Shown here piece by piece: positions 4,103 to 60,569 of a stretch of DNA of 64,000 nucleotides. Each line of letters opens with the position of its first letter. Position 1 is the first letter of the stretch. The notes below the pieces were generated by a model that did not search any database, was not told the origin of the DNA, and worked only from the letters and a program-made list of their open reading frames with translations. The stretch is taken from IMG/VR virus record IMGVR_UViG_3300049793_000366, positions 124,001 to 188,000 of that record; one strand, given 5' to 3'. The position numbers were made by a program, and so were the translations under genes.

Positions 4103-5368
4103 ATGAAAGAAGAAAAATATATCGCAGTAATGTTTCCTTACCCATCTGGTAGCGGATTGCACATAGGTCACTTTTATAACTATGCTATAATCGATTCATA
4201 TTGTCGTTATTGGCGATATAAGGGAGTTAATGTATTTCAGCCATTTGGTTATGATTCATTTGGCTTGCCTGCTGAGAATTACGCGAAGAAAGTAGGTCGA
4301 GATCCTAAAGATGTTACATATGAAAACATCGAGAGGTTCAGAGCGCAAATGGATAAGATGGACACTCAATATGAAGAGAAGTTGATAACATCTGACCCTT
4401 CTTACCAGAAATGGACTCAGTGGTTGTTCACTAAATTGAAAGAACACGGTTTGGTTTATAAAGCTAAAGGGGATGTGAATTACTGCCCTTCTTGTGAGAC
4501 AGTATTGGCTCGTGAACAGGTTAAGAATGATAAGTGTGATAGATGTTCATCTGTTGTTGAAACCAGAAGCTTGGAGCAGTGGTATTTTAAGATAACTGCT
4601 TATAAAGACCGTTTGATTAAAAACTTGGATAAGATTGATTATCCACAAAGTACGATTAATGCTCAAAGAGCTTGGTTGGAGAATTTGCACGATTGGTGTG
4701 TTTCAAGACAACGTAGTTGGGGTTGCCCTATTCCAATAGAGGGTGAAACTGATACATTGGACACATTTGTAGATTCATCATTCTATTATATCAGATATTG
4801 CGACCCATATAATGACAACGAAATTTGTGCTAAAGATAAGTACAAACAAGTTGATGTTTATGTAGGTGGTAATGAACACGCTTGTATGCATTTGATTTAC
4901 GCGAGGTTCATCAATATGTTCTTGTATGATATTGGTGTTGTCTCAGAAGAAGAACCATTTAAAAGAGTAATACATCAAGGTATGATTTTGAACAATGGTG
5001 CTAAAATGGCTAAATCGACTGGTAATGTTATTAATCCAGATGATTATAACTCTGATGAATTGAAATTTTATTTGATGTTCATTGGTCACTATTTCGATGG
5101 TGGTTCTTGGTCTGACCAAAACATATCTGGTATTAAACGCTTTGTCAATAGATTTAAAGAATGGATGTCGAGAGAGGGTGATGAAACGATTGACTTGGTT
5201 AAGTTTAAAGAAACTGTATTTGGTTATACAGAAGCTTTTAAATTCAATAAGGTTGTTAGTGAATTCATGGTGTTGGTAAATCAGAACAGAACTAAAAATA
5301 TCACAAAGGAATGTAAGAAGGAGATTGTTGATATTATTAAGATTTATATGCCATCAATAGAGGTATAA
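4103..5368 (+). CDS. leuS: Minimal leucyl-tRNA synthetase lacking the CP1 editing domain, with reduced C-terminus
   Basis: MFPYPSG..LHIGH, GYDSFGLPAEN, CPSC/CDRC zinc knuckle, QWYFKIT, DWCVSRQRSWGCPIP, DTLDTFVDSSFY, YVGGNEHACMHL, KMAKS. Confidence 0.92.
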   Translation: MKEEKYIAVMFPYPSGSGLHIGHFYNYAIIDSYCRYWRYKGVNVFQPFGYDSFGLPAENYAKKVGRDPKDVTYENIERFRAQMDKMDTQYEEKLITSDPSYQKWTQWLFTKLKEHGLVYKAKGDVNYCPSCETVLAREQVKNDKCDRCSSVVETRSLEQWYFKITAYKDRLIKNLDKIDYPQSTINAQRAWLENLHDWCVSRQRSWGCPIPIEGETDTLDTFVDSSFYYIRYCDPYNDNEICAKDKYKQVDVYVGGNEHACMHLIYARFINMFLYDIGVVSEEEPFKRVIHQGMILNNGAKMAKSTGNVINPDDYNSDELKFYLMFIGHYFDGGSWSDQNISGIKRFVNRFKEWMSREGDETIDLVKFKETVFGYTEAFKFNKVVSEFMVLVNQNRTKNITKECKKEIVDIIKIYMPSIEV

Positions 5369-27391: not shown

Positions 27392-27880
27392 ATGAATACG
27401 TTTAAATTTAAAGAACCGTTTGTTGGAATTTTAGTGGGTCCACCGCTATCAGGTAAGTCCACATGGCTTCGCGAGAATTTTGACGCTTCTGAAATAGTTA
27501 TTATTTCTCGTGACCAAATTGTTTTGGACGTATATGGTTCTAACAATTACTCCGATGCTTTTAATAATGTAAATCAGAAAGATGTAGATAGACAACTAAT
27601 TGAAAATATCACTGATGCATCTAAAGGCACAAAAAACGTTATCATTGATATGACTCATATGTCCTCTAAAAGACGTAGATATAACCTCTCACATTTTCCG
27701 AATCACTATAAAGTAGCTTTCCTTTTCCCTATCTTGGATGAAGTTGAATATGCTCGTAGAAATGAAATGCGTAGACTTGAAGAGAATAAATGGATACCTG
27801 AACACGTAATCAAGAATATGATTTCTAGCTATCAACCAATTAAAGAAGAAGAAGGATTTAATAAAGTTATTTCAATATGA
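27392..27880 (+). CDS. Polynucleotide kinase-like P-loop kinase (AAA_33)
   Basis: GPPLSGKSTW, ISRD, VIIDMT..S.KRR, RN..R....IPEHVI; TATCTTTG promoter 27380-27387. Confidence 0.8.
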   Translation: MNTFKFKEPFVGILVGPPLSGKSTWLRENFDASEIVIISRDQIVLDVYGSNNYSDAFNNVNQKDVDRQLIENITDASKGTKNVIIDMTHMSSKRRRYNLSHFPNHYKVAFLFPILDEVEYARRNEMRRLEENKWIPEHVIKNMISSYQPIKEEEGFNKVISI

Positions 27881-28326
27881 AGAAGAAAAGAATATACATA
27901 GACATGGATGGTGTTTTGTGTGATTTCTATGGTGCTGCACGAAAAGCATTAAAAGAAAACCCAAAACAACCATTTCCTCAAGCACAGTGGGGATTTTTCC
28001 TTAAGCTTAAACCAATTGATGGTGCGCTTGAAGCATTTAATTACTTATTCGAAAATTATGATGTTTGGATCTTAACCAGACCATCTACACGTAATGTTAA
28101 TTGCTATACAGAAAAAGCACAATGGGTTTGGGACCACTTAGGTGAGAAAGCAGTTGATAAGCTTATTCTATCATGTGATAAGAATTTATTAAAGGGTGAT
28201 TATTTGATTGATGATAATCACTGGGATTTTGAAGGGGAGCATATTCATTTCAATACTGAAAAATTTCCTAACTGGGAAACAGTAGTTAAGTATATAGATT
28301 CTTCTTGTAAACAACAATTAAATTAA
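27877..28326 (+). CDS. HAD-family 5'(3')-deoxyribonucleotidase (NT5C-like)
   Basis: IYIDMDGVLCDF, EKAQWV, GDYLIDD. Confidence 0.85.
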   Translation: MKKKRIYIDMDGVLCDFYGAARKALKENPKQPFPQAQWGFFLKLKPIDGALEAFNYLFENYDVWILTRPSTRNVNCYTEKAQWVWDHLGEKAVDKLILSCDKNLLKGDYLIDDNHWDFEGEHIHFNTEKFPNWETVVKYIDSSCKQQLN

Positions 28327-28333: not shown

Positions 28334-28519
28334 GGCGAGGTGGTGAAAGTAGACACTGGTGTTATCTGTTAACCAATTGTAGAGAGCCGAAAGATGGGAA
28401 GCATTGACTTACTATTCGGGTAGCTTTAATAAACAGACGGAAAGACATTGGTCTTTTATTATCGAAAGATAGTTGCGAAGGAAACAACACAAATGCGGGT
28501 TCAAGCCCTGCTCTCGTCA
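28334..28519 (+). ncRNA. tRNA-like RNA with a large branched insertion replacing the anticodon loop
   Basis: Acceptor GGCGAGG/TCTCGTC plus A73; D-arm GTG-AAAGTAGA-CAC; T-arm GCGGG-TTCAAGC-CCTGC; stem GTGTT 28359-63 / AACAC 28486-90 encloses about 120 nt with further hairpins. Confidence 0.75.
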
Positions 28520-28533: not shown

Positions 28534-28935
28534 ATGGCAAACGCATGGATTCATTCAGTATCATCAGTTAGAAAGTTTGGCGGTAAGCCAGAAGATTATT
28601 TAGAAATTCATCGTAAAATGGATTGTTCTAAATCGTATATTTCTGATAATCGACACAGAGCATTAACACATACAATGTTTTGGGTTAATGAGGTAATGGT
28701 TCCTCTATTTGGTTATACAATGACTAATAGTGATAACCGCGTAATTGCTGTCAAGGATATATGTGAAAGACATATACTCGAAGATTTCCATATGAAATTT
28801 ATTCCCACCGCACAAGATTATCTTGAACACATGGAGTTCAAAGATTGGATGCAAAATGGTGTTAAAGGACACCCATCTTCTTATAATAAGCTTGCTGAAA
28901 AGAATGCTGAAAAAGAGAAAGAGACAACCGATTAA
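28534..28935 (+). CDS. Conserved phage protein (DUF6915-like)
   Basis: HSVSSVRKFGG..EDY..IH..MD.SK....DNRHRALTH pattern. Confidence 0.6.
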   Translation: MANAWIHSVSSVRKFGGKPEDYLEIHRKMDCSKSYISDNRHRALTHTMFWVNEVMVPLFGYTMTNSDNRVIAVKDICERHILEDFHMKFIPTAQDYLEHMEFKDWMQNGVKGHPSSYNKLAEKNAEKEKETTD

Positions 28936-29397: not shown

Positions 29398-29847
29398 ATG
29401 AACGTAACAGACGAATTAAAAAAGCTGAATGAAGAATTTGTGCAACAGAAAAAAGAGTTAATGCTTCGAACAAGAGTTTTATTCGATAAGGCATTAATTG
29501 AAGTATTTGATAAGCACGAAGGACTTGAATCATTTGGTTGGACACAGTACACTCCGTATTTCAATGATGGTGATGAATGTACTTTCAGCGCACATACAGA
29601 TTATCTCTACATCAATGGTGTAAACGAAGATGATATGGACGACATCAGTGAGAAAACATATGACTACACAAGTGGTAAGAGATTACCGAATGAAAAATAT
29701 AATAGCGCGAAAGCCGCTATGATTAGTGAAATTAAATCTATCCTTAATACTGTTGATGAGGAATTCTTAAAAGAGACGTATAATGACCATGTTAAGGTCA
29801 CTATTACTCGTGAGGGTTCATCTGTTACGAATTATAGACATGATTAG
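29398..29847 (+). CDS. Conserved phage hypothetical protein
   Basis: WTQYTPYFNDGDECTF motif. Confidence 0.6.
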   Translation: MNVTDELKKLNEEFVQQKKELMLRTRVLFDKALIEVFDKHEGLESFGWTQYTPYFNDGDECTFSAHTDYLYINGVNEDDMDDISEKTYDYTSGKRLPNEKYNSAKAAMISEIKSILNTVDEEFLKETYNDHVKVTITREGSSVTNYRHD

Positions 29848-29910
29848 TGGTGTAACCGAAAAACCGAAGAGTAGGAAATTAACAATTAAACAATTTAAAA
29901 CAAAAACAAA

Positions 29911-32322: not shown

Positions 32323-33426
32323 TTATCCCATTGTTAAGAAGATTTTTCTGTTTAATCTATCAACAGCAAGTACTTTAACTTGGATGTCTTGACCAGCAGA
32401 GAATTGTTTGGTGTTACTGAACTTTTCAACTTCTGATGTGTGAATTAAACCGATTGTCTCTTCGTCAAGGTTAACAAGAACACCAAATGCTTTGTTATCT
32501 TTAACTTTACCTTTGAACTTCTGTCCAACTTTGATACCATCCCAAAGTGATTCTTTTAGAATCTGGGTAAGAATAATCTTATCCTTGATGATTTCTTTTA
32601 CGTAGAAGTCAACTGCTGTTCCAGCTTGAATTTGGTCAATTTTATCAGCCCATTCAGGATTGATGTTTGATTTGTGAATCATACCAGTTAAACATTCGTT
32701 GAATTCGACGAACACACCGAATGGAGTAGTTCCAGTTACGTGTCCTGTGTAAACAGACTCAGCATCTAACTTCTTAATCTCTTTTGGTATTAAAGATTGT
32801 AAGTATTTTTTGCGAGATACTATATACGTTCCTTTCTCGTCTGAAAAAGACTCCACCATAACGTTGAATGTTTTACCAACAATAACGCTTGGGTCATGTA
32901 GCTTGTTAACACCAGCTAAAGTGTTTGGCATGAATGCCGGGATTGTAACACCGTTGTATAGAATATCTAAATCATATCCAGCTGGGTTAAGTTCTTTAAC
33001 TTTTGCTTCAACGAAGTCAGTAGATTCTAACGATTGTAACCCTAAGTGAATCGCTTGTTCATAAATAGCTGAAATGCTACCTTTAATGAAGAATGGATTT
33101 TCTTGTTGGTCTGTTACTAACACGTCAATGTATTGACCATGTTTTAAATTTTGAGTATAAGAAAGTTCTTTCTTATTTGATTCAACACGAAGATAATCTT
33201 TATATCCAATATCGAATACTAAATATTCGTTGGTTGTTTCGATAAACTTTGCGTTGGTAATTTCACCAGTCTTCGGCAAAACAAATTTGCCCAATTGGTA
33301 GAGCTTTAACATTTGCTCTGCATAAGGTTCAGTACAATAAAGTACATAACCGTCTTTTGTTTTTCTTGGTTTCTTAGACCACTCAAAAACATCTTTAAAT
33401 TCTGCGTTTCCGTAGGTTTCTGTCAT
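32323..33426 (-). CDS. rpsA: Ribosomal protein bS1-like protein (tandem S1 domains)
   Basis: IVSRKK, YTGHVTGTTPFGVFVEF..GMIHKS, GKVKDNKAFGVLV..GLIHTSE, VKVLAVDRLNRKIFLT. Confidence 0.8.
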   Translation of the reverse strand: MTETYGNAEFKDVFEWSKKPRKTKDGYVLYCTEPYAEQMLKLYQLGKFVLPKTGEITNAKFIETTNEYLVFDIGYKDYLRVESNKKELSYTQNLKHGQYIDVLVTDQQENPFFIKGSISAIYEQAIHLGLQSLESTDFVEAKVKELNPAGYDLDILYNGVTIPAFMPNTLAGVNKLHDPSVIVGKTFNVMVESFSDEKGTYIVSRKKYLQSLIPKEIKKLDAESVYTGHVTGTTPFGVFVEFNECLTGMIHKSNINPEWADKIDQIQAGTAVDFYVKEIIKDKIILTQILKESLWDGIKVGQKFKGKVKDNKAFGVLVNLDEETIGLIHTSEVEKFSNTKQFSAGQDIQVKVLAVDRLNRKIFLTMG

Positions 33427-41500: not shown

Positions 41501-41775
41501 TTATTATTAGCTGGTTGTATAATAGATCCAGCAGAATCGATAGAATATAGGGTATTGATATTGTTGTTTAATCTATCAATTTCGGACTTTAAAAATCCAA
41601 TGGTTGGTAGGTTAAATTGTCTCAAAACGCCATTCTCATCAGTTATTTTTACACTGATTGAGTTTTCTGTTGTTGTTACTAAATCGTTTAGTTTAGATAG
41701 TAATTCTACCGCATTGCGGTTATAACTTATGATTTGTTCTGCTACGGTTGTAAAGGAATTTCTTATTGTTGACAT
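38575..41775 (-). CDS. Large (1066 aa) probable virion structural protein
   Basis: Coiled coil plus FnIII-like VEIRIKSISEVGWPESPVESDWS segment; TATATA motif upstream. Confidence 0.55.
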   Translation of the reverse strand: MSTIRNSFTTVAEQIISYNRNAVELLSKLNDLVTTTENSISVKITDENGVLRQFNLPTIGFLKSEIDRLNNNINTLYSIDSAGSIIQPANNKFKKIITADLNREPATIGSLNVVSSFVTNKNWIFDGLLNPMLNIIIDLNGKIENNVRKCQVRRYIVEFAKDDAGNLTNLGQSALNSFNTLFRGQTAIKIDEFDRWHRTTPGITSPNEPNYDEQIFDLDPNELLYNGLFTVIKVEQDTLNRKLWYHLDTIDYLVTGTNEIRQLAHGDEVIVNVDISTTRYKVVEVSTLASNFRVRFERVEGLQPIAVGIGTLKVYSPVVFNKNVKISVGYDERNVVFVKPLNADNHLLAKDWSLGTGYWTNDLRLNSEDPNNGKSMEQFYTENVYDYGEVLKDLVAKKIPNQLAGTPPAPTLNADNFKVVQINKHLTDTPNGNLIKTKHNEQKNLKSEIQQISDSLIAKNKQIKVTRFTSDAQRKQFELEVDKLQKQKESKLSLQSSLVKDILDISKTTSIGKQSPKFSIRGFWTIPDAIITRGTKPQEIVQFRIQYKYTTKDGKEPTTTTFKLKPVKNGENIKTGAFSNWKEIKTDARKRIQDPKTKQYSWTIEDVSDADTPNINQLDIPISPNERVEIRIKSISEVGWPESPVESDWSQIISLDFPDDLNDVMADDQFILKEATQEELKVRMQSELDARGLSTILDGITVVGNKTYVTSSDSILSGFKDDNGTAIDLHGYLKSLQDRVIALEEKIKRAKGELVITMFRNNQPFVIKNNSEITFNVECEDYLDTFSDTGVPTGRVYQNNIYVIKDFLLKIENKSVESPLGLLSSRIYNTSTELYNTAAPQIFWVNELNQLLFSNTTGKTLTQKNNQFAWSVNYSTIEDTSTVTKLADNIGNAFTTNANNSIVPALASTEYNIGYSETTLLSFNNSNTSLLETSKWVENSVSVSSTTKLLTTIHPVVQDLDKLVETNSDKVHTVPGGPNNAINIPINIYFKMNSLDPNAGTGNNYKYIVLNNVTQTVKHIKKLKFFLENEAENRPFTFTIKFNLSRNKVAVQKNLSNLPTGQNISL

Positions 41776-41888
41776 TTCTTCCTGCTAATTTTTTATTATA
41801 TATAAAAAAAATATGGTTATGTACCATAGTTGGAATCGCTATTTGTGTGGATTTCGCCATTTGGATTTTTTTGCTTATATTTGTAATT

Positions 41889-42206
41889 ATGGACAAATCT
41901 TGGTCATTAAAGAATAAGCGTGATATTGAAAATTTATTCAGTAAGGGTAAATCATATACATCTGGTTGCATTGTAGCCAGATATGTGGACTCGACTGAAA
42001 CTAAGTTTCTATTCGCTGTTAGTACCCGTCTGTATAAGCGCGCCAATAAGAGAAATAGAGTTAAGAGGTTGATGCGTGTTGCTGTTGCTGAGATAAAGAA
42101 TACGGTAGTCAACAAACACGTTGCTTTTATCTATATAGATACTGATATTAAATCATTAAGTGATATAAAAAATAGCATAGCTGGTCTTAAATGTCTGAAC
42201 CCTTAG
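41889..42206 (+). CDS. rnpA: Ribonuclease P protein component
   Basis: SLKNKRDIENLFSKGK, FAVSTRLYKRANKRNRVKRLMR (RNR motif); TATATTTG 41876-41883 points to ATG 41889. Confidence 0.85.
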   Translation: MDKSWSLKNKRDIENLFSKGKSYTSGCIVARYVDSTETKFLFAVSTRLYKRANKRNRVKRLMRVAVAEIKNTVVNKHVAFIYIDTDIKSLSDIKNSIAGLKCLNP

Positions 42207-47146: not shown

Positions 47147-48346
47147 ATGATAATTCAGTCACTTCTCGATTTAGACTATTACAAACTAACAATGGGTCAA
47201 TTAGCTTTCTTAAGCTTCCCTGATGTTGAAATTGAAGCCGCCTTTAAAAACAGAAAATCAAATATTCGATTAGCGGATATTATCCCGGTTGACCGATTGA
47301 TATCCGAACTCAATCATGTTAGAACTCTGGTTCTTAGTAAAGAACAGTTAAAGTTCGTTGAAAAACAGGGCATATTTAAGCCAGAATACCGAGAGTATCT
47401 ATATCAGATAAACCGTAGCAATCCTCTATCCGAAGTACGAGTAGAGGTTGTTGATGGTCAATTTGATGTGAGAACAAAGGGTAAATGGCCTAATGCCATT
47501 TTGTGGGAAACAATAGTATTAGCTGTTATTAACGAGCTATATTATGAGTATAAATACCCAAATCTCTCTTATGATGAGGGTCTTACTAGACTTGCGAATA
47601 AGATTAAAATTCTTAAAAAGCATCCACAAATTAAATTCTCTGACTTCGGTACTCGAAGAAGAGCATCAAGAACATGGCAAGCACTTGTTGTTAATAAATT
47701 AAGACAAGCATTACCTAATCAGTTTCTTGGAACATCGAATGTTCAGTTGGCTATGGATTATAACATAACTCCAATTGGAACATTCGCACATGAAATGCCA
47801 ATGGTTGCTTCTGGTGTTTGGTATGATACTGATGTTGAATTAAAAGCATCACATGGTAGAGTACTTGATATGTGGTATGAGTTATATGATGTTAAATTAT
47901 CAATTGCTCTTACTGATACATTTGGAACCAAATTCTTCTTTGAAGACTTCGTAGACCGCGCACCAGTTTGGAATGGTTTACGACACGATTCTGGTGATCC
48001 ATTTGAATTTGGTCATAAAGTATTAGCTTACTACGCATCACTGGGTATTGATTCTAAAACAAAAACTATTGTGTTTAGTGATGGTTTGGATTTAGATATC
48101 ATCATCCGACTCGAAGCAATATTTGGTAAATTAATTAAATGCGTTTTCGGTTGGGGTACGACTCTGACAAATGACATTGGGTATGAAACATTATCTATTG
48201 TTATGAAAGCCATCCGTGCTAATGGTAATGAATTGGTTAAGCTTTCTGATAACTTAAATAAAGCTACTGGTTCCGATGCTACTAAATCTCGATACATTAG
48301 TGTATTTGGGTATGACAATCAAAAGCGTGAAGAGTGTGTAGTCTAA
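47147..48346 (+). CDS. pncB: Nicotinate phosphoribosyltransferase
   Basis: DLDYYKLTM, DFGTRRR, GTSNV, PIGTFAHE (phospho-His), LTDTFG, LRHDSGDP, IVFSDGL, FGWGT, VKLSDN..KATG. Confidence 0.93.
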   Translation: MIIQSLLDLDYYKLTMGQLAFLSFPDVEIEAAFKNRKSNIRLADIIPVDRLISELNHVRTLVLSKEQLKFVEKQGIFKPEYREYLYQINRSNPLSEVRVEVVDGQFDVRTKGKWPNAILWETIVLAVINELYYEYKYPNLSYDEGLTRLANKIKILKKHPQIKFSDFGTRRRASRTWQALVVNKLRQALPNQFLGTSNVQLAMDYNITPIGTFAHEMPMVASGVWYDTDVELKASHGRVLDMWYELYDVKLSIALTDTFGTKFFFEDFVDRAPVWNGLRHDSGDPFEFGHKVLAYYASLGIDSKTKTIVFSDGLDLDIIIRLEAIFGKLIKCVFGWGTTLTNDIGYETLSIVMKAIRANGNELVKLSDNLNKATGSDATKSRYISVFGYDNQKREECVV

Positions 48347-48372
48347 TAAGTAAAACCTAAAAACAAAAACAC

Positions 48373-48672
48373 ATGGAATATAACGGTCAAACAAAAAAGG
48401 AATACGAGAAAAACTTCACACGTATTCGTGATATTATCACTAAGGCTGATGGTGATAAGGAAAAAGCTCTTCGACTTGCTAAAACACAAGCAGACAGAAT
48501 AGAAGATGAATATAAAGCAATCAATCGTTCAAATGCCGCAGTAAAGCTTGGACATGAGTGGTTAGCTGACCCTTTCTTCGAAAGAGCTTATGAGCTTGGT
48601 GCTGTGGGTAAAATGGAGTACCGCGAATACAAGCTTAAGAAATTATTTGAAATGCAAGAAGAAGGAGCCTAA
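48373..48672 (+). CDS. Hypothetical protein with C-terminal tag
   Basis: EYREYKLKKLF. Confidence 0.6.
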   Translation: MEYNGQTKKEYEKNFTRIRDIITKADGDKEKALRLAKTQADRIEDEYKAINRSNAAVKLGHEWLADPFFERAYELGAVGKMEYREYKLKKLFEMQEEGA

Positions 48673-48875
48673 TGAGACAGCAGATTCTTAAATACTTACC
48701 TATTAAAATTGCAATATTATTCTCTTTTATTACTGTGCCTCTTATCGCAGCAATATTCGTTAATAGTGTTGTAATTTCTTACTTAATTGGTGCTATTTTT
48801 TTCGGTTTGCTACTGTTAGTTTACTATATAGTGAAGGGAAGGAAATCTCACCCAGAATTAAAAAATAAAATTTGA
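48672..48875 (+). CDS. Small 2-TM membrane protein
   Basis: Two hydrophobic helices. Confidence 0.55.
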   Translation: MRQQILKYLPIKIAILFSFITVPLIAAIFVNSVVISYLIGAIFFGLLLLVYYIVKGRKSHPELKNKI

Positions 48876-48876
48876 A

Positions 48877-49134
48877 ATGAAAGAAGTAAGAATTCTATTA
48901 ACGGAAGAAACATTCACACTTTTGTGTAAGCAGGGCTATGTTGCATATAAGAATAATATGTTTAGCGTATCTCAGATAAACATCACAAAAGCCGACTTGG
49001 AGAAGTTGATAAGCGGTGATATCATCGATAAACCACAGGATGGTGTTGACTTTAAAATTGCGTTAATGGATATCGGTTATGATAGGATTTTACCAATAAT
49101 TAAACGTTCACCATTCTATGGTAATTCTATATAA
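48877..49134 (+). CDS. Hypothetical protein
   Basis: ORF in operon. Confidence 0.55.
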   Translation: MKEVRILLTEETFTLLCKQGYVAYKNNMFSVSQINITKADLEKLISGDIIDKPQDGVDFKIALMDIGYDRILPIIKRSPFYGNSI

Positions 49135-49399
49135 AAATTTAGTATTTTGTTCAAGTATATATGGTACTAAACTGACTGGTAGAAAGGATGTGAAATTTTT
49201 AGAAGTACATTATGGTAGCGATAAAGATTTTATTGAAAAGTATCAGAAAATTTACCCAAATCATCGAAAGGGAATATTCTTAGATGCTAGAAAACCTGTA
49301 CCGAGAGATTTCAGACTCGATGTTGAACATATGATTAAGTCAGACCCACTGTTAATTCAAACAATTCGTGATTTAAAGCTTGAAGAGTTATGTCAATAG
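49118..49399 (+). CDS. Hypothetical protein with C-terminal tag
   Basis: Ends TIRDLKLEELCQ. Confidence 0.55.
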   Translation: MVILYKNLVFCSSIYGTKLTGRKDVKFLEVHYGSDKDFIEKYQKIYPNHRKGIFLDARKPVPRDFRLDVEHMIKSDPLLIQTIRDLKLEELCQ

Positions 49400-49770
49400 A
49401 AGAGAAAATATTCATATATGGGTTTATGTTTATTATGCTTGGTGTTCTATACTTCATCGGATTTTTTATACGTGACTATAAACAAAAGTATCTACGTAAT
49501 AAAAGAATGCAGAGGTTGAATTGGAATAAGGTATTGAAAATATTCGCGTGTGTTACTGGATTTTGTTTACTTGGTTCTATCAACAATAAAATGTTTACTT
49601 GGTATGAAGCTCCGATAATGGGATTTACTATCACTGCTGTGATTTTGTTTGCTGGTATATTTAGACCAGAGAATGATACAAATGAGTATAAACAATTCGA
49701 TAATCCTGAGTTTAAGGTATATGAGAAAGCACATCAGAGAGATAGAAAAATTAAAGATATTTTAAAATGA
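49390..49770 (+). CDS. 3-TM membrane protein with C-terminal tag
   Basis: Ends HQRDRKIKDILK. Confidence 0.6.
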   Translation: MSIEEKIFIYGFMFIMLGVLYFIGFFIRDYKQKYLRNKRMQRLNWNKVLKIFACVTGFCLLGSINNKMFTWYEAPIMGFTITAVILFAGIFRPENDTNEYKQFDNPEFKVYEKAHQRDRKIKDILK

Positions 49771-50321
49771 AGGTAGGATTATTCTTTGGGTCATTTAACC
49801 CAATACACTTAGGTCACTTAGAGATTGCTGAGAAATCAGCTAAATATGTAGATGAAGTTTGGTTCATTGTTTCACCTCACAATCCATTTAAGGATCCGAG
49901 TATGTTGATAAACCAAACTTCTCGATTAGAAATGGTTAAGTTAGCCGTTGAGTCTACACCGCATTATAAAGTTAGTGATGTTGAATTTAATTTACCAACA
50001 CCTACGAGAACTCATGTTACTTTAGAAAAATTAATCGAAGAACACGAGCATGAATTTTTATTGATATTTGGTTCTGATTGTGTGAATACATTACACACAT
50101 GGGAAAGAGGTGATTGGATTTTAGAAACATTTCCTATCATCGCATTTAAGAGAGAATCTGAGGATGTAAATCCTGAAATTTATAAAAAGTTAATATCAGA
50201 AACTCATATATCATCTACGATAATACGAAATAATATTATAAATGGTTTGCCGGTTGATAGTCTTCTACCAACTTTAGTTGAGCAATACATATATAATAAT
50301 GGATTATGGTCACACAAGTAA
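49767..50321 (+). CDS. nadD: Nicotinate-nucleotide adenylyltransferase
   Basis: GLFFGSFNPIHLGH, VSPHNPFK, RLEMV, IFGSD, W, ISSTIIR. Confidence 0.92.
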   Translation: MKVGLFFGSFNPIHLGHLEIAEKSAKYVDEVWFIVSPHNPFKDPSMLINQTSRLEMVKLAVESTPHYKVSDVEFNLPTPTRTHVTLEKLIEEHEHEFLLIFGSDCVNTLHTWERGDWILETFPIIAFKRESEDVNPEIYKKLISETHISSTIIRNNIINGLPVDSLLPTLVEQYIYNNGLWSHK

Positions 50322-50575
50322 ATAAAGTACTACACTTTGATAATTCGAGAATAGAACTATCGCAAACTGGTCTTTGTTTTACTGCCTTTTTCTACACGAA
50401 TGATAGCGAGAAACCTTGTTTTCATTTTAAATTTTATTCGGATGGAAAGTCGATAATTGAGGATTTTAAGAAGGAAGCTCGTAACTATATGTCAACCAGT
50501 ATATTGACTGATTTTATCAACAAAAACCCTGATGTATTACGGACAATTAATTTTGATAATTTAATTGTTAATTGA
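50306..50575 (+). CDS. Hypothetical protein with C-terminal tag variant
   Basis: Ends VLRTINFDNLIVN. Confidence 0.5.
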   Translation: MVTQVNKVLHFDNSRIELSQTGLCFTAFFYTNDSEKPCFHFKFYSDGKSIIEDFKKEARNYMSTSILTDFINKNPDVLRTINFDNLIVN

Positions 50576-50629
50576 GAAAAAGTTTGTATATTTGTAATTG
50601 ATTAATGGACACTAAAAACCAAAACATAT

Positions 50630-51247
50630 ATGTTTAAATTAAAACCAAATACTCGTTCATTGTTCTGGAATGTTGACACTCAAGTTGACTTCATGAATTC
50701 AGAAGGTAAGTTATACGTTACTGACGCAGAACAAATCAAAGACACTTTAGCAAAAATAACCAAGTTCGCTAAAGACAACAATGTTCAGGTTGTTAATACT
50801 GCTGATTGGCATTATGCTGATTCTGCTGAGTTATCCGAAACACCTGATTTTATAAATACCTTCCCACCACACTGTATGGCTAATACGCCTGGTGCTGAGT
50901 TGATACCGGAAACAAAACCAGAAAAGTATGATTCTATCATTGATTGGAAAAATCCAAAATGTGATATTAAAACTGACTCTACAAACTTTTTAGTCTTGAA
51001 AGATAAGTTTGATGTCTTCACTGGAAATCAGTTCACTAAAAGATTAATTGATGCTTTAAACCCAGATGTTGTTTACGTCTATGGTGTAGCTACAAATGTC
51101 TGTGTTGACTGTGCTGTTAACGGTTTACTTGATAACGGTTATAAAGTGGTTGTGTTTGAAGATGCTATTAAAGAGCTTCCAAATATACCATCACCAATAC
51201 AAAATTGGATAGACAAAGGAGCAGAAATTATTAAATTCACAAACTAA
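50630..51247 (+). CDS. pncA: Nicotinamidase (isochorismatase family)
   Basis: VDTQVDF, TADWH, FPPHCM..TPGAEL, K, GVATNVCV; promoter TATATTTG 50587-50594. Confidence 0.88.
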   Translation: MFKLKPNTRSLFWNVDTQVDFMNSEGKLYVTDAEQIKDTLAKITKFAKDNNVQVVNTADWHYADSAELSETPDFINTFPPHCMANTPGAELIPETKPEKYDSIIDWKNPKCDIKTDSTNFLVLKDKFDVFTGNQFTKRLIDALNPDVVYVYGVATNVCVDCAVNGLLDNGYKVVVFEDAIKELPNIPSPIQNWIDKGAEIIKFTN

Positions 51248-51259
51248 AATATAAATACT

Positions 51260-52114
51260 ATGAATACGAAAAAAGTATCAAATCACATCACCAATTGGTT
51301 AAAAGATTTTGCATTAAATACTAAACAAAACGGTTACGTTATCGGAGTATCTGGTGGAATTGACTCCGCAGTTGTTTCGACACTATGCGCCCGTACTGGA
51401 TTACCACTTATTGTTGTGAGTATGCCTATTCATCAAGAAGCTAATCAAGTTTCTCGCGCACAAGAGCATATGGATTGGTTGAAAAAAAATTATCCAAATG
51501 TAACACAGTTTGAATTTGACTTAACATCAGTTTATGATTCATTCGTAACTAAGTTAGATGGTAAAACACATTTTATTTCAAAGCCTGAGCATGATACACA
51601 GGTTGCTGATAAAATGTTCTTAACACTTGCGAATACTCGCTCTCGTTTGAGAATGACAACACTTTATTCACTTGCCGGATTAAACAATATGCTTGTTGCT
51701 GGTACTGGTAATAAAGTAGAAGACTTTGGTGTAGGATTCTTCACTAAGTATGGTGATGGTGGAATTGATGTATCACCAATCGGTGAGTTGATGAAATCTG
51801 AGGTATACATATTGGGTGCTGAATTAGGTATAAACCAAGCAATACTTTCAGCAAGACCTACTGATGGTCTTTGGGATGATGGTAGAACAGATGAAGACCA
51901 AATTGGTGCTACTTATGATGAACTTGAGTGGGCTATGGGTGTTCAAGAAGAATTGGGAAATAATCCTGAGACTTTATACGAAATGAACGAAAGACAAACG
52001 ATAGTGTGGAATATTTATTTGTCTCGACACACCGCTAACTCACATAAAATGCAAATGCCACCAGTTTGCTCATTAAAAGGAATTAAATATGATGAAGAAG
52101 TTGTTGCACAGTAA
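51260..52114 (+). CDS. nadE: NH3-dependent NAD+ synthetase
   Basis: IGVSGGIDSA, NTRSRLRM, GTGNKVE, GFFTKYGDGG, PTDGLW, DEDQIGATYDELE, NSHK; no glutaminase domain. Confidence 0.93.
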   Translation: MNTKKVSNHITNWLKDFALNTKQNGYVIGVSGGIDSAVVSTLCARTGLPLIVVSMPIHQEANQVSRAQEHMDWLKKNYPNVTQFEFDLTSVYDSFVTKLDGKTHFISKPEHDTQVADKMFLTLANTRSRLRMTTLYSLAGLNNMLVAGTGNKVEDFGVGFFTKYGDGGIDVSPIGELMKSEVYILGAELGINQAILSARPTDGLWDDGRTDEDQIGATYDELEWAMGVQEELGNNPETLYEMNERQTIVWNIYLSRHTANSHKMQMPPVCSLKGIKYDEEVVAQ

Positions 52115-52460
52115 TCTATCTGGTGTTGAGAACACCAGTGATTTAAATTATGTTTTTTCTTTAATTAGAAAGGCATCAAATTCAATCGAAAGAACTGCTT
52201 TAATAAAAAAAGCATTGAAACTTAATGAAGAGGTTGGTGAATTATCAGCAGAAGTTTTAAGAGAAGATGGTTATAAAGACAGCACTTATACGAAAGAAGA
52301 AATTCGTAGAAGAATAATCGAAGAGGCAGTTGATTCATTAGTTATGATTGGTGATATTCTAAACGATGTTAAAGCAACCGATTCTGAAATAATTGACTGC
52401 ACCGAAGATGCTGTTACGAAATGGTTGACTAAACTCGATGAGAAGAAGAATAAAGTCTGA
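52089..52460 (+). CDS. MazG-like NTP pyrophosphohydrolase
   Basis: KLNEEVGELSAE...IIEEAVD. Confidence 0.75.
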   Translation: MMKKLLHSNLSGVENTSDLNYVFSLIRKASNSIERTALIKKALKLNEEVGELSAEVLREDGYKDSTYTKEEIRRRIIEEAVDSLVMIGDILNDVKATDSEIIDCTEDAVTKWLTKLDEKKNKV

Positions 52461-52686
52461 GTGGCGTAGTGAGACTAAAAATCTCACAGAGATTGGATAT
52501 CTTCAACACACCATCAATACGGTGAATGATATGATAGCAGAGACAGAGGTGTTGGTTGATAGATTGCTCGATAAGGGTGAATTAACTGACGTTGACCGTC
52601 TTATGCTTAGAGAATTGGAAGAATATAAAGTAGGATTAAGAGAGTTAAAAGCTCAAGGAATAAAAAATTTAAAAGAAGCACTATGA
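52438..52686 (+). CDS. Hypothetical protein
   Basis: ORF in operon. Confidence 0.5.
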   Translation: MRRRIKSEWRSETKNLTEIGYLQHTINTVNDMIAETEVLVDRLLDKGELTDVDRLMLRELEEYKVGLRELKAQGIKNLKEAL

Positions 52687-53090
52687 AAAAATTAACAGCT
52701 TATGTTGTATTCGAAAAGGGGTACGAGTACAATGACGAAATTTATCACTTACCTGATGTAAGCGGTGGTGATCCAAAGAGAGTAACATTCTCAAAAGAAG
52801 ATGCTAAGAATCTTATTACTGTGTTGAGCAGAGATTCATTCAGAGGATTGGATATTGGTAATTATACATATGACCTAAAAGATGTAGTTGATGAAATATC
52901 TCTAAAAGAGATATTCAAAATCAATAAGTGGAAATGGGATGAAGATAATTTAACTGTTCCTGAGAAAGCAACCGATGAACAAATCGATGAGGTTATGAAA
53001 TTTATTGATTTACAGTTTTATGACTTTCAGGAAGTTGAAATGGATATTGCATCAATGCGTAATGCAAAAATAGAAATAGTAGAAAGCTAA
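52683..53090 (+). CDS. Hypothetical protein with C-terminal tag variant
   Basis: Ends SMRNAKIEIVES. Confidence 0.55.
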   Translation: MKKLTAYVVFEKGYEYNDEIYHLPDVSGGDPKRVTFSKEDAKNLITVLSRDSFRGLDIGNYTYDLKDVVDEISLKEIFKINKWKWDEDNLTVPEKATDEQIDEVMKFIDLQFYDFQEVEMDIASMRNAKIEIVES

Positions 53091-53626
53091 TGAATTTTAA
53101 AAATAAACCGAACCATTGTATTAGTACTGAGAATGGTCAAGTGTGGGTGTCTCGTTCGGTAGCAGTAGTGGTTACTACCTTACTACGATGTAATGATGAA
53201 TTATATGCGCTTATGATTAAGCGTGGTGAGAGCGTTCATGCTTCGGGTAAATGGTGTATGCCTTGTGGTTACTTAGATTGGGATGAAACCGCGTCTGAGT
53301 GTGCTGTTAGAGAGATTTGGGAAGAATCTGGATTAGATGTTCTGGGTCTATCTAAATCTGAAATTGAACATAATGGTTTACATAATGTGTGGGATTTAAA
53401 TACTAATCCTGACTTAAATGATAGTCAAGATGTAGCTCTTCATTATTCAATAATAATATCTTCTGATAACTTTCCTAAGCTTAGTGATGAAAATGCCGAA
53501 GAGAATGAGGTAGTTGGCCTTGCGTGGGTTAAACTTTCTGAACTTGGTGAATATAACTTAGCATTCCGTCACGACGAAAGAATAAAAAAGTTTTTGGATT
53601 ACTATGAGAAGATTAAAGTTAAATAA
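53090..53626 (+). CDS. Nudix hydrolase (candidate ADP-ribose pyrophosphatase)
   Basis: GKWCMPCGYLDWDETASECAVREIWEESGL Nudix box; LAFRH C-terminal motif. Confidence 0.85.
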   Translation: MNFKNKPNHCISTENGQVWVSRSVAVVVTTLLRCNDELYALMIKRGESVHASGKWCMPCGYLDWDETASECAVREIWEESGLDVLGLSKSEIEHNGLHNVWDLNTNPDLNDSQDVALHYSIIISSDNFPKLSDENAEENEVVGLAWVKLSELGEYNLAFRHDERIKKFLDYYEKIKVK

Positions 53627-53781: not shown

Positions 53782-54219
53782 ATGGAAATTTTAAATAGAA
53801 GAGCATATTACGATTATAGCATCATAGAACATTATGAAGCGGGTATTATGTTGACTGGTTCGGAGATAAAGTCAATACGAGGTGGTGAAGCAAACTTAAA
53901 TGAAGCATATGTATTCATCAATAACGGCGAGGTATTCGTTAAGAATATGTACATTTCTAAATTTGAACAATCTTCATATTTGAACCATGAAGAAAAGCGT
54001 GATAGAAAATTATTACTTTCTAAAACTCAAATTTTAAAAATTGAAAAATATCTACAAACAAAAGGTACTGTGATTATACCGATAAAAGTATTTTTCAGCA
54101 AACGCTGGGCAAAACTAAAAATCGGAGTTGGTCGTGGTAAGAAAACCTACGATAAGAGAGAATCGATAAAAGAAAGAGAATCAAAAAGAGAATTGTCTCG
54201 ACTGAACTCGAAAGTATAG
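53782..54219 (+). CDS. smpB: SsrA-binding protein SmpB
   Basis: NRRAYYDY, EAGIMLTGSEIKSIR, RDRKLLL, GRGKKTYDKRESIK. Confidence 0.93.
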   Translation: MEILNRRAYYDYSIIEHYEAGIMLTGSEIKSIRGGEANLNEAYVFINNGEVFVKNMYISKFEQSSYLNHEEKRDRKLLLSKTQILKIEKYLQTKGTVIIPIKVFFSKRWAKLKIGVGRGKKTYDKRESIKERESKRELSRLNSKV

Positions 54220-59059: not shown

Positions 59060-60037
59060 TTATTCAGCGAATGAAAGGTTAAGCTGTTCGATTGATTGTT
59101 TCTCTTCAAGACTAATAATAGCCCTTGCTATCATTTTGTCGCATGATATAACGTGTAACTTGTCGGATTGTTTATTAACAGCTATTGTGTCTGATATAAT
59201 CAATTCAGTTAATACAGAAGAGTTAAGATTCTCGATAGCATTTCCGGATAGAATACCATGTGTAGCAATAGCACGTACTGACCTAGCACCATTTTCCATT
59301 ACCAACTCACTTGCTTTCTTTAAAGTACCTAATGTATCAGCCATATCATCTATGATAACAACATTGCGGTCTTTTACATCAGCACCCATTAATTCCATTG
59401 AATGAATTTCATTTGGTTTAACTCGGCGTTTATTTATCTGAGCGAAGTGTGCTTCTGGGAAATATTTAGCAAAGTCTAATGCTCTTTTTACACCACCTTG
59501 GTCTGGTGACATTATTGTTAGATTTTCAAGAGCAAGTGACTTGATGTAGTTTGTGAAAATTTTACCACCATTTAAGTGAATAACTGGTATGTTGAAGAAT
59601 CCTTGAATTGCAGATGCGTGTAAATCAATTGTGATGATTCGTGTTGCTCCACCTCTTTCATAGGCATCAGCCATAACCCTTGCTCCAATTGATGAACGAA
59701 GGTGGTCTACCTTATCTTGACGTGAGTAACCATAATATGGTGTCACGAGTGTTATTTCTTTAGCACCAGCTCTTTTAGCAGCATCTAATATCAACATAGT
59801 TTCCACGATAGAATCAGAAGAACTTGTTGTTTGTATAATATAGATATCTTTACCACGCACAGACTCATTGAAAGTTGGGAATATCTCACCATCTTTGAAT
59901 TTCTCAATCTTTAAATCACCAAGACCCGTACTTTGTGGTGTCAGTAGACTTGTAGCTTGTTGCGACAATACGATTTTATTAATACTATCAGCGAGTGATT
60001 CGCTTGATGTTCCAGAAAAAATAGTGAATGTGTTCAT
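59060..60037 (-). CDS. prs: Ribose-phosphate pyrophosphokinase (PRPP synthetase)
   Basis: KFKDGE, ESVRG, PYYGYSRQDK, IDLHASAIQGFF, SPDQGG, KRR, VIIDDMADTLGT, ATHGILSG; likely start MNTFTIFSG (60037). Confidence 0.93.
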   Translation of the reverse strand: MNTFTIFSGTSSESLADSINKIVLSQQATSLLTPQSTGLGDLKIEKFKDGEIFPTFNESVRGKDIYIIQTTSSSDSIVETMLILDAAKRAGAKEITLVTPYYGYSRQDKVDHLRSSIGARVMADAYERGGATRIITIDLHASAIQGFFNIPVIHLNGGKIFTNYIKSLALENLTIMSPDQGGVKRALDFAKYFPEAHFAQINKRRVKPNEIHSMELMGADVKDRNVVIIDDMADTLGTLKKASELVMENGARSVRAIATHGILSGNAIENLNSSVLTELIISDTIAVNKQSDKLHVISCDKMIARAIISLEEKQSIEQLNLSFAE

Positions 60038-60047
60038 AATAGTGGTA

Positions 60048-60569
60048 TTAATTTTTTGATGAAATGTTTTCATTTAATAAAGAATTAAGTGTTATATCTC
60101 TATATACAGCTTGTAGTGTTGATTCATATACTTCATCATCATAAATGAATGTATCTGGTTTTATAAATTGTGCTAGCTTTAATCCTCTGTACATAAACCC
60201 ATTTGTAGTTAATTCCGGGTCTTCTTCTGTCAATACGAATGGTATGCTAATTGTGAATGATTCTATGGTTATGTCAGATGGGTATATTGCTGGTAGTGAT
60301 GGAAATCCTGTATTTGAACTGAAAAAGAAATATGATGCTTCTGTGCTTTTTGGTGTTGAAAATATTGTATTGGTGTGTATTGGTGTGTTGTTGAAGCTTA
60401 GTGTGATACTCAGCGGATAACCTTCTGGTGTTTTTATAAATTTAGATTTGAAGTTCTTATCTATTTCTTTAAAAATACCATCTTTGATTACAAGTTCAGT
60501 TAGGTCGATTTCCTCACTGGTTCTGTAAACGTCAATACTTACTGTTTTATAATTATATTTTCTCGTCAC
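60048..60569 (-). CDS. Hypothetical protein with C-terminal tag variant
   Basis: VYRDITLNSLLNE. Confidence 0.55.
   Translation of the reverse strand: MTRKYNYKTVSIDVYRTSEEIDLTELVIKDGIFKEIDKNFKSKFIKTPEGYPLSITLSFNNTPIHTNTIFSTPKSTEASYFFFSSNTGFPSLPAIYPSDITIESFTISIPFVLTEEDPELTTNGFMYRGLKLAQFIKPDTFIYDDEVYESTLQAVYRDITLNSLLNENISSKN

What the first reader, a model, noticed from the sequence alone, without database searches (positions are those of the whole stretch)
28334..28519. tRNA-shaped RNA whose anticodon loop is replaced by a ~120-nt multi-hairpin domain
Seen: Leu/Ser-like 5' end GGCGAGGTGGTGAAAGTAGACAC, 7-bp acceptor with A73 (no full encoded CCA), canonical T-arm. The anticodon-position stem GTGTT/AACAC encloses TCTGTT(28365-70)/AACAGA(28432-37), AAAGAC-ATTG-GTCTTT (28441-56) and ATTATC-GAAA-GATAGT (28458-73, GNRA loop), plus a short frame ending ...MGSIDLLFG-TAG-CTT-TAA-TAA (28394-28432). 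It looks too short for a group I intron and lacks the alanine G3:U70 identity of tmRNA. Inference: a new tRNA-mimic class, for example a decoy for anticodon nucleases, an intron-containing tRNA matured by the phage Pnk/ligase, or a miniature tmRNA-like RNA acting with the phage SmpB/bS1/RnpA/mini-LeuRS. It sits immediately downstream of the Pnk and phosphatase genes.
Basis: partly seen in the sequence, partly recalled or inferred. Interest (0 to 1): 0.8.

Follow-up and report, generated by a model that had tools for sequence, protein, structure and literature searches.

The report
Phage RNA in a tRNA frame
A small group of giant (about 700 kb) phages carries a conserved 186-base non-coding RNA in which a 125-base folded domain of unknown function sits inside a frame derived from a leucine tRNA; it is neither a working tRNA nor a small tmRNA, and it matches no described RNA family.

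Summary
Window 28334-28519 (+) has a 7-bp acceptor stem, a 3-bp D arm, a canonical T arm and A73. About 125 nt of hairpins sit where an anticodon loop belongs. Default ARAGORN and Rfam find nothing. ARAGORN in intron mode calls a tRNA here and nowhere else in the window or in 640 kb of shuffles.

Homologues reached through the flanking proteins give four distinct variants in the same slot (NT5C-like phosphatase, RNA, DUF6915). The RNA is 78-92% identical between variants, while 4-fold sites of the neighbouring genes are 39-54% identical, so it is under strong purifying selection.

Compensatory changes support hairpin 2, the T stem and the acceptor stem. The short ORF and its stop codons are not conserved, so it is not tmRNA-like.

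In one variant (L042) the tRNA frame is gone, replaced by a 15-bp helix, while the inner domain is kept. The "intron" is therefore the constant part.

My best reading is a stable non-coding RNA whose tRNA-Leu-derived frame serves as a processing and stabilising handle. The function of the inner domain is unknown. I judge it a new RNA family and a new variant of the tRNA-like RNA theme.

The parts
28334..28340 (+). Acceptor stem, 5' strand (GGCGAGG)
   Evidence: Pairs with 28512-28518. One-sided compatible changes occur in relatives: G2.U71 to A-U and G7.U66 to G-C. Called by ARAGORN -i.
28343..28356 (+). D arm: 3-bp stem GUG/CAC with a short loop AAAGUAGA (only one G where G18G19 is expected); class II, tRNA-Leu-like
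   Evidence: The 5' 23 nt align with tRNA-Leu genes of related phages. In L042 this stretch became the 5' strand of the replacement helix.
28359..28363 (+). P1 5' strand (GUGUU), the 'anticodon stem' position; uncertain helix
   Evidence: Pairs with 28486-28490. Four pairs are invariant; the middle pair is A.C in L030 and L042.
28365..28370 (+). P2 5' strand (UCUGUU)
   Evidence: Pairs with 28432-28437. Invariant in all four variants.
28380..28428 (+). Central irregular hairpin (UAGAG/CUUUA, CCGAA/UUCGG, UGG/CUA, AAG/CUU) with conserved internal loops and an apical loop of 5-7 nt
   Evidence: RNAalifold consensus. The sequence is nearly invariant. Apart from a few differences confined to L042, at the outermost predicted pairs of the hairpin and in the spacers beside it, the differences between variants (including the 1-nt indels) fall in predicted loops or bulges. 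There is no covariation, so the fold is a prediction.
28432..28437 (+). P2 3' strand (AACAGA)
28441..28456 (+). Hairpin 1 (AAAGAC-AUUG-GUCUUU)
   Evidence: The stem is constant and the loop is free to vary: AUUG, AUAG, UCG, AAAA.
28458..28473 (+). Hairpin 2 (AUUAUC-GAAA-GAUAGU)
   Evidence: Best-supported helix. The four variants read AUUAUC/GAUAGU, ACCAUU/GAUGGU, AUCAC/GUGAU and UCAC/GUGA. Four pairs show changes on both sides (three counted on the MAFFT alignment).
28474..28485 (+). Conserved purine-rich strand UGCGAAGGAAAC
   Evidence: Identical in three variants; one A fewer in L042. No partner found.
28486..28490 (+). P1 3' strand (AACAC)
28495..28511 (+). T arm (GCGGG-UUCAAGC-CCUGC)
   Evidence: Canonical T loop. 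In L043 the stem changes G52-C62 to A-U and G51.U63 to G-C. It is 91% identical over 23 nt to a tRNA-Leu(UAA) of a related phage.
28512..28519 (+). Acceptor stem 3' strand (UCUCGUC) and discriminator A73; no encoded CCA

Best explanation
This is a gene for a stable non-coding RNA of about 186 nt made of two modules.

Module 1 is a frame descended from a tRNA-Leu gene: acceptor stem, class-II-type D arm, T arm, A73 and no encoded CCA.

Module 2 is an inner domain of about 125 nt placed where the anticodon loop would be. It has a short closing helix (P1), helix P2 carrying a long irregular hairpin with very conserved internal loops, two small hairpins whose sequence is free, and a conserved 12-nt purine-rich strand.

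The inner domain is the working part. The tRNA frame is a handle.

Shown: the RNA is conserved, non-coding and structured. The frame is tRNA-like and has changed in ways that keep its base pairs. The inner domain persists when the frame is swapped for a plain 15-bp helix.

Inferred: the gene has no promoter or terminator of its own and lies inside a run of same-strand genes, so the RNA must be cut out of a longer transcript. The frame would recruit RNase P at the 5' end (the phage encodes its own RnpA), and RNase Z plus CCA addition at the 3' end. That would give a compact, nuclease-resistant RNA and at the same time separate the upstream and downstream messages. In the L042 lineage a long duplex, a typical RNase III substrate, would do the same job.

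Unknown: what the inner domain binds. My guess is a protein of the phage or host translation or RNA apparatus.
For: 1. The tRNA frame is real. ARAGORN -i gives one hit in the window and none in ten shuffles. The frames of all three frame-bearing variants are called tRNA once the insert is removed. Its ends resemble tRNA-Leu genes of related phages. Changes in the T stem and acceptor stem keep the pairing.

2. Selection is strong. The core is 78-92% identical and the frame 84-91%, against 39-54% at 4-fold sites and 55-61% at third codon positions of the flanking genes.

3. It is not coding. There are 1-nt indels and no shared open frame on either strand.

4. The inner domain does not depend on the frame. 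L042 has no acceptor stem or T arm (ARAGORN finds nothing). Instead it has a 15-bp closing helix whose 5' strand descends from the D-arm sequence, with fold z = -4.2. Its hairpin 2 carries compensatory changes.

5. No sigma-70-like promoter or intrinsic terminator flanks the RNA on its strand. It is tightly packed between genes on the same strand.

6. RnpA is encoded in the window.
Against: - Only four distinct sequences exist. Covariation is confined to hairpin 2 and the frame and is statistically weak on the tool's count (3 double changes; 101 of 500 shuffles do as well).
- The fold of the central domain rests on energy and on where the changes fall, not on covariation.
- P1 has an A.C mismatch in two variants.
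- The window RNA's own folding energy is unremarkable (z = -1.7).
- No expression or end-mapping data are available.
- Processing by RNase P, RNase Z or RNase III is inferred from shape only.
- The inner domain has no proposed partner.
- A frame kept this tRNA-like (canonical T loop, A73) could mean more than a processing handle.
Confidence: 0.6

Rival explanations
1. It is an intron-containing tRNA. The roughly 115-nt insert is removed by an endonuclease and the halves are healed and sealed by the phage kinase/phosphatase and RNA ligase. The product would be a 72-nt decoding tRNA whose anticodon depends on the cut site: GAA Phe, CAA Leu, CUA amber suppressor or CUG Gln.
For: ARAGORN -i calls tRNA-Phe(GAA) with a 115-nt intron at 32/33. 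Any splice point leaves a loop with U33 and A37. A Pnk-like kinase and a HAD phosphatase lie directly upstream, and an RNA ligase is in the window. Lak megaphages, also huge phages, have unexplained 79-114 nt tRNA 'introns' without an Rfam match (PMC6784885).
Against: - L042 keeps the 'intron' and has lost the 'exons'.
- The 'intron' is about as conserved as the exons.
- It is too short for group I, with no group I/II or ribozyme match even at E<=10.
- The two junctions are 48 nt apart on the 3' side of P2, so no bulge-helix-bulge can form.
- No splicing endonuclease was seen in the window.
- The anticodon stem has an A.C mismatch in L030.
- The D loop lacks G18G19.
- The kinase/phosphatase pair occurs unchanged in relatives without the RNA.
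- No intron-less allele was found.
Confidence: 0.12
2. It is a cis-acting leader of the DUF6915 gene: a riboswitch-like or protein-binding element that controls translation or stability of the downstream message.
For: It always lies 14-17 nt upstream of the DUF6915 start codon, on the same strand. Its architecture (a multi-helix junction with invariant joining regions and free hairpins) resembles aptamer domains. In relatives the slot holds an L7/L12-like ORF translationally coupled to DUF6915.
Against: There is no alternative pairing that could hide the start region. No terminator follows. The closing helix (tRNA frame or 15 bp) is too stable to switch. No Rfam riboswitch matches. A tRNA frame is not a feature of known leaders.
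Confidence: 0.1
3. It is a tRNA-shaped bait or acceptor. The Leu-type frame is recognised (and perhaps leucylated) by LeuRS, EF-Tu or tRNA-targeting defence toxins, and the inner domain modulates that interaction.
For: The frame keeps A73 and a class-II D arm. From established knowledge, LeuRS does not read the anticodon. The acceptor and T stems are maintained by pairing-preserving changes. The phage encodes a LeuRS core, SmpB, an S1-domain protein and RnpA.
Against: L042 dispenses with the frame. The mini-LeuRS occurs in well over 100 huge-phage lineages, including L042's genome, whereas the RNA occurs in four. The D loop is defective for the elbow contact. There is no direct evidence of charging.
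Confidence: 0.08
4. It is a miniature tmRNA-like RNA working with the phage SmpB.
For: It has tmRNA topology (ends form an acceptor stem and T arm, with a domain inside). SmpB is encoded 25 kb away. No canonical tmRNA is in the window.
Against: The tag-like frame is not conserved: frameshifting indels, and the stops are lost in L030. Position 3:70 is C-G, and the 2:71 G.U becomes A-U in L043. ARAGORN's tmRNA mode and Rfam find nothing, even with relaxed settings. L042 has no tRNA-like domain at all.
Confidence: 0.02
5. It is a decaying tRNA-Leu pseudogene with junk inserted, and has no function.
For: It is not detected as a tRNA by default tools. It has a short D loop and a narrow distribution.
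Against: It is 78-92% identical where neutral sites are saturated. Stems carry compensatory changes. A new, perfectly paired helix evolved in L042.
Confidence: 0.02

Closest known systems
'Enigmatic' intron-bearing tRNAs of Lak megaphages (Devoto et al. 2019, PMC6784885)
   Same: They occur in huge phages. A tRNA cloverleaf is interrupted in the anticodon loop by an insert of about 80-115 nt. The insert is highly conserved, has no Rfam match and no known splicing mechanism.
   Different: Lak inserts sit at 37/38, contain their own T-arm-like minihelix (GGTTCGAATCC), and intron-less alleles exist. Here the insert has a different sequence and fold, no internal T arm and no insert-less allele. 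One lineage keeps the insert without the tRNA.
tmRNA (SsrA)
   Same: The 5' and 3' ends form an acceptor stem and T arm, and a large domain replaces the anticodon arm. The phage also encodes SmpB.
   Different: There is no G3:U70, no conserved tag frame and no pseudoknots predicted. It is about half the usual size and has a real D stem. It is not found by ARAGORN or Rfam, and the frame is dispensable in L042.
Group I intron-containing bacterial tRNAs (for example cyanobacterial tRNA-Leu(UAA)); from established knowledge
   Same: A Leu-type tRNA is interrupted in the anticodon loop.
   Different: An insert of 115 nt is well below the size of known self-splicing group I introns (about 200 nt or more). 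There is no Intron_gpI match at E<=10.
tRNA-like stable RNAs and mimics: phage T4 species 1/2 RNAs (rnaC, rnaD) in its tRNA cluster, bacterial YrlA/Y RNA, mascRNA (recalled from memory, not tested)
   Same: These are non-decoding RNAs that borrow tRNA shape for processing by tRNA enzymes or for protein binding. Some are phage-encoded and of unknown function.
   Different: There is no sequence or family relationship. YrlA has the opposite topology (the tRNA-like part is internal). None carries this inner domain.
Engineered 'tRNA scaffold' for recombinant RNA (Ponchon and Dardel 2007; recalled from memory)
   Same: The design is the same: an RNA of interest is inserted in place of the anticodon loop, so the chimera is processed and stabilised like a tRNA.
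   Different: That scaffold is a laboratory construct. This would be a natural counterpart, which is unproven.

Membership tests
Canonical tRNA | Contiguous cloverleaf with a 7-nt anticodon loop, detected by standard tRNA models | tested here: not met
   Default ARAGORN finds 0 genes. Rfam finds nothing at the gathering threshold. The only tRNA-model hit is 13 bits, E = 9, on the 3' part.
Intron-containing tRNA | The exons alone fold into a cloverleaf | tested here: met
   ARAGORN -i, and ARAGORN on the insert-less frames of the window, L030 and L043.
Intron-containing tRNA | The insert belongs to a splicing-competent class (group I/II core, or a bulge-helix-bulge at the junctions) | tested here: not met
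   No intron or ribozyme family at E<=10. The insert is 115 nt. The junctions are not brought together by a 4-bp helix.
Intron-containing tRNA | The tRNA is the selected product: exons are retained and the intron is dispensable or more variable | tested here: not met
   L042 retains the insert and lacks the exons. Insert and frame are similarly conserved.
Intron-containing tRNA | A spliced, ligated tRNA exists in cells | not testable with these tools
   Needs tRNA-seq or a Northern blot.
tmRNA | tRNA-like domain with alanine identity (G3:U70) | tested here: not met
   3:70 is C-G in all three frame-bearing variants. 2:71 is G.U or A-U.
tmRNA | Conserved internal tag reading frame ending in a stop codon | tested here: not met
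   There are 1-nt indels inside the frame. In L030, TAG becomes AAG and TAA TAA becomes TAA AGA. No frame is shared.
tmRNA | Recognised by tmRNA models | tested here: not met
   ARAGORN -m, even at lowered thresholds, finds nothing. Rfam finds nothing.
Any Rfam 15 family | Covariance-model match | tested here: not met
   Window at gathering threshold. The 450-nt region at E<=10. L042 and L043 loci at E<=1.
Riboswitch or cis-regulatory leader | An aptamer coupled to an expression platform (terminator, or pairing that hides the start site) | tested here: not met
   There is no terminator-like site between the RNA and the start codon. The spacer is A-rich and unpaired. Ligand or protein binding is not testable here.
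Conserved structured non-coding RNA (generic) | Conservation above the neutral rate, no coding potential, and base pairs kept through compensatory change | tested here: met
   Covariation is limited to hairpin 2, the T stem and the acceptor stem, and is weak statistically with four sequences.

The most novel reading that the evidence does not exclude
The Leu-type frame is a working acceptor, not just a handle. After RNase P/Z processing and CCA addition, the RNA is leucylated by a LeuRS (which ignores the anticodon). It then enters the translation apparatus, or baits acceptor-end-directed defence toxins, while carrying the inner domain as cargo. Alternatively, the gene is dual-purpose: it is cut and re-ligated by the phage kinase/phosphatase/ligase set into both a free inner RNA and a decoding (possibly suppressor) tRNA. 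In either case the frame-less L042 form would be a secondary simplification.
Probability: 0.1. Interest if true: 0.85.

Novelty: new variant of a known kind. Interest (0 to 1): 0.58.

Why it matters
If the reading is right, this is a natural example of the "tRNA scaffold" design: a functional RNA domain carried inside a tRNA body so that the cell's tRNA enzymes cut it out and protect it. One lineage swapped the tRNA frame for a plain helix, which shows directly that the two modules are separable.

It adds an unknown structured RNA to the translation-related genes of the largest known phages (LeuRS core, SmpB, S1-domain protein, RnpA).

It also suggests a different way to look at the unexplained "introns" in Lak megaphage tRNAs: the insert, not the tRNA, may be the product that matters.

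The family is narrow (four lineages) and its function is unknown, which limits the immediate impact.

Tried and rejected
Searches for more copies that found nothing:
- blastn (words of 11 bases) of the 207-bp gap against GenBank phages gave only chance hits.
- The two huge phages with similar flanking genes, and the IMG/VR relative L005, have no RNA there.
- Exact or degenerate pattern scans of IMG/VR found only the source contig or chance hits.
It returned 12 chance hits and cannot be repeated.
- GTDB genome scans returned nothing or chance hits.
- A covariance model of the core found no further copy in 191 kb of window plus loci.
- The other members of the DUF6915 90% cluster are all of the type with an L12-like ORF.

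Ideas rejected:
- Class II tRNA-Ser(CGA) with an insert after the D arm (ARAGORN at 80% threshold). Its anticodon stem register is broken in L030, while the GAAA-tetraloop register covaries.
- The RNA as a remnant of the L12-like gene: no similarity.
- A loop-loop pairing CCAAU/AUUGG: not conserved.
- A specific link to the mini-LeuRS: the enzyme is widespread.
- A functional clue from DUF6915: no PDB sequence match, a model with pLDDT 70, and no informative fold match.

Full report
**Observation**

- A 7-bp acceptor stem (GGCGAGG/UCUCGUC, with G2.U71 and G7.U66), A73 and no encoded CCA.
- A 3-bp D stem with a short loop (GUG-AAAGUAGA-CAC), of the type seen in class II Leu tRNAs.
- A canonical T arm (GCGGG-UUCAAGC-CCUGC).
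- In place of an anticodon loop, about 125 nt holding UCUGUU/AACAGA, two small hairpins and a short ATG...TAG frame.

The element fills the 207-bp gap between an NT5C-family HAD phosphatase ORF (27877-28326) and a DUF6915 ORF (28534-28935). An AAA_33/Pnk-like kinase lies just upstream.

Default ARAGORN and Rfam 15 find no RNA gene anywhere in the 64 kb. A relaxed Rfam search of the region gives only a 13-bit tRNA hit on the 3' part.

It calls none in ten block shuffles of the window. The anticodon is arbitrary. Depending on where the insert is taken out, the 7-nt loop reads GAA, CAA, CUA or CUG.

**Source and relatives**

The window is part of IMGVR_UViG_3300049793_000366 (508 kb). The same protein is on record on a 711,805-bp JGI contig. 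Its nearest GenBank matches are 630-640 kb uncultured phages. DNA pattern scans of IMG/VR, JGI metagenomes and GTDB genomes found no other copy.

Homologues came from the flanking proteins instead, followed by retrieval of the contigs that encode them. Four distinct variants of the RNA occupy the same slot, kinase, phosphatase, RNA, DUF6915:
- the window;
- L030 1761-1945 (Logan SRR21686424);
- L043 2801-2983, with six identical copies in L044-L049;
- L042 2822-2983 (NCBI GCA_040384045.1, a 709-kb contig).

In all other relatives examined where the sequence upstream of DUF6915 is available, that place holds a protein gene. In most it is an L7/L12-like ORF of 141-165 aa (L028, L029, L031, L034-L040; also L001 and L005). 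In L032 and L033 it is a CoaE-family gene. All remaining members of the DUF6915 90% cluster are of the L028 or L031 type. The L12-like gene is therefore the older occupant of the slot. The RNA shows no similarity to it.

**Selection**

Between the four phages, 4-fold degenerate sites of the three flanking genes are 39-54% identical and third codon positions 55-61%. Neutral sites are close to saturation.

The RNA core is 78-92% identical and the tRNA frame 84-91%. That is comparable with first and second codon positions, at 86-91%.

The RNA does not encode a protein. Variants differ by 1-nt indels inside the putative frame, and no open frame is shared on either strand.

**Structure**

The best-supported helix is hairpin 2 (28458-73). 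It reads AUUAUC-GAAA-GAUAGU, ACCAUU-GAAA-GAUGGU, AUCAC-UAAG-GUGAU and UCAC-AAAA-GUGA in the four variants. Four pairs are changed on both sides.

Hairpin 1 keeps its stem while its loop varies (AUUG, AUAG, UCG, AAAA).

In the frame, L043 changes the T stem G52-C62 to A-U and G51.U63 to G-C. The acceptor pairs G2.U71 and G7.U66 become A-U and G-C in relatives.

P2 and the central irregular hairpin are invariant, so covariation cannot test them. Apart from a few differences confined to L042, at the outermost predicted pairs of the hairpin and in the spacers beside it, the substitutions and indels there fall in predicted loops or bulges.

P1 (GUGUU/AACAC, the "anticodon stem") has an A.C mismatch in L030 and L042 and is uncertain.

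On the MAFFT alignment the tool counts 96.7% of cells paired, against 39-49% for slid controls. It counts only three double changes, and 101 of 500 shuffles do as well. With four sequences the statistical support is weak, and I state it as such.

**The decisive variant**

L042 has no acceptor stem, no D stem and no T arm, and ARAGORN finds nothing there. Yet it keeps the inner domain at 78-83% identity, including a compensated hairpin 2.

Its inner domain is closed by a 15-bp helix (GAGUAUAAGUCACAC/GUGUGACUUAUAUUC), with fold z = -4.2. The 5' strand of that helix aligns with the D-arm sequence of the other variants. This suggests the tRNA frame was there first and was converted.

So the part that every lineage keeps is the "intron". 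The tRNA part can be replaced by a plain duplex.

**What this excludes**

- tmRNA-like. The tag frame is not conserved: TAG becomes AAG, TAA TAA becomes TAA AGA, and there are frameshifts. There is no G3:U70 and no tmRNA model match.
- A tRNA gene with a passive intron. This is unlikely given L042, the equal conservation of insert and frame, the absence of any group I/II or ribozyme match and of a bulge-helix-bulge, and the A.C mismatch in the anticodon stem. The upstream kinase/phosphatase pair also sits at the same place in relatives without the RNA.
- A pseudogene. This is excluded by the conservation.

**Most likely mechanism**

The gene has no promoter-like or terminator-like site of its own on its strand. 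It is packed between genes on the same strand, so the RNA must be released from a longer transcript.

A tRNA-shaped frame is the natural signal for RNase P, RNase Z and CCA addition, and the window encodes an RNase P protein (RnpA, 41766-42206). A 15-bp duplex is a typical RNase III substrate.

I therefore read the frame as a built-in processing and stabilising handle and the inner domain as the working part. This is the same logic as the laboratory "tRNA scaffold" (recalled from memory).

The processing steps are inferred, not shown. The ligand or partner of the inner domain is unknown. Its invariant internal loops and the 12-nt strand UGCGAAGGAAAC look like binding surfaces, but that is only an impression.

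A cis role on DUF6915 expression remains possible, because the RNA always ends 14-17 nt before its start codon. So does a role of the Leu-type frame as an acceptor or bait.

**Context**

The window carries several translation-related genes:
- a 421-aa LeuRS core that keeps HIGH and KMAKS but lacks the CP1 editing domain, the Leu-specific insert and the last ~120 residues;
- SmpB;
- an S1-domain protein;
- RnpA;
- an RNA ligase;
- a NAD salvage cluster.

The LeuRS core is tempting as a partner for a Leu-type frame. However, about 420-aa versions occur in well over 100 clusters from huge-phage contigs, including the 709-kb contig that carries the frame-less L042 RNA. There is no specific association.

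DUF6915 gave no functional clue.

**Comparison with known things**

The nearest precedent is the set of "enigmatic" tRNA introns of Lak megaphages (PMC6784885). Those are inserts of similar size, strongly conserved, with no Rfam match. But they sit at 37/38, contain their own T-arm-like minihelix and have insert-less alleles.

In topology the RNA resembles tmRNA. In logic it resembles tRNA-like stable RNAs.

It is not a member of any described family. I rate it a new variant of a known kind (tRNA-derived or tRNA-like non-coding RNA) and a new RNA family. Interest is moderate to fairly high, limited by the narrow distribution and the unknown function.

Noticed in passing
window 4103-5368 (+): A 421-aa LeuRS core (TIGR00396, 393 bits, below the cut-off). 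HIGH and KMAKS motifs and the zinc-binding cysteines are kept. The CP1 editing domain, the Leu-specific insert and the C-terminal ~120 residues (end of the anticodon-binding domain plus the C-terminal tRNA-binding domain) are missing. About 420-aa versions form more than 120 clusters at 72-84% identity on huge-phage contigs up to 780 kb.
   Followed up: partly
window 53782-54219 (+): A full-length SmpB (Pfam E = 6e-53), although no tmRNA gene is detectable in the 64 kb by ARAGORN or Rfam. A phage tmRNA may lie elsewhere in the genome, or the host's may be used.
   Followed up: no
window 41766-42206 (+) and 32323-33426 (-): A phage-encoded RNase P protein (RnpA) and a 367-aa protein with S1 domains. 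No RNase P RNA was found in the window.
   Followed up: no
L028 2690-3187; L031 588-1070; L034 2583-3008; also L001 and L005, upstream of DUF6915: In most relatives without the RNA, the slot before DUF6915 holds an ORF of 141-165 aa. Its N-terminal part resembles the C-terminal, factor-binding domain of ribosomal protein L7/L12 (Pfam weak; TIGR00855 E = 9e-6). It often overlaps the DUF6915 start. The window has no such gene.
   Followed up: partly
L008 1-2925, L009 1-2923, L010 5231-5847: Related phages have large tRNA arrays beside the NT5C homologue. Many nominally class I tRNAs in them are far too long (Asn 88 nt, Ile 90, Val 84, Cys 89, Thr 82, Lys 89, Trp 83, His 86), as if they carried long variable arms. 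They could be unusual or recoding tRNAs.
   Followed up: no
window 29847-29877 (+); L043 4469-4501; L042 4333-4365: A match to the Rfam DUF805b RNA motif (RF02914) lies just upstream of the 640-aa SPFH/Band 7 gene. It scores 37.6 bits in L043 (above the gathering score of 35.6), 29.7 in L042 and 27.4 in the window.
   Followed up: partly
window 47147-53626 (+), 59060-60073 (-): A NAD salvage and synthesis set: NAPRTase, a NadD-like cytidylyltransferase-fold enzyme, isochorismatase/nicotinamidase, NAD synthase and NUDIX, plus PRPP synthase. Such sets are often read as counter-measures to NAD-depleting defence.
   Followed up: no
window 60905-61549 (-), 27392-28326 (+): An RNA ligase (PF09414), and a separate Pnk-like kinase (AAA_33) and HAD phosphatase (NT5C family), which together look like a split RNA-repair set. 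The kinase/phosphatase pair is also present in relatives without the RNA.
   Followed up: partly
whole source genome: The IMG/VR record is 507,910 bp. Proteins of this window are also on record on a 711,805-bp JGI contig, and a close relative is on a 709,085-bp NCBI contig (GCA_040384045.1, filed as a genome assembly). These phages are among the largest known.
   Followed up: no
window 28534-28935 (+): DUF6915 has many invariant His, Cys, Asp and Glu residues (H7, H26, D30, C31, H41, H46, E53, C77, E78, H80, D84), which suggests metal binding or catalysis. Some JGI records name homologues 'cysteinyl-tRNA synthetase'. No structural match was found.
   Followed up: partly
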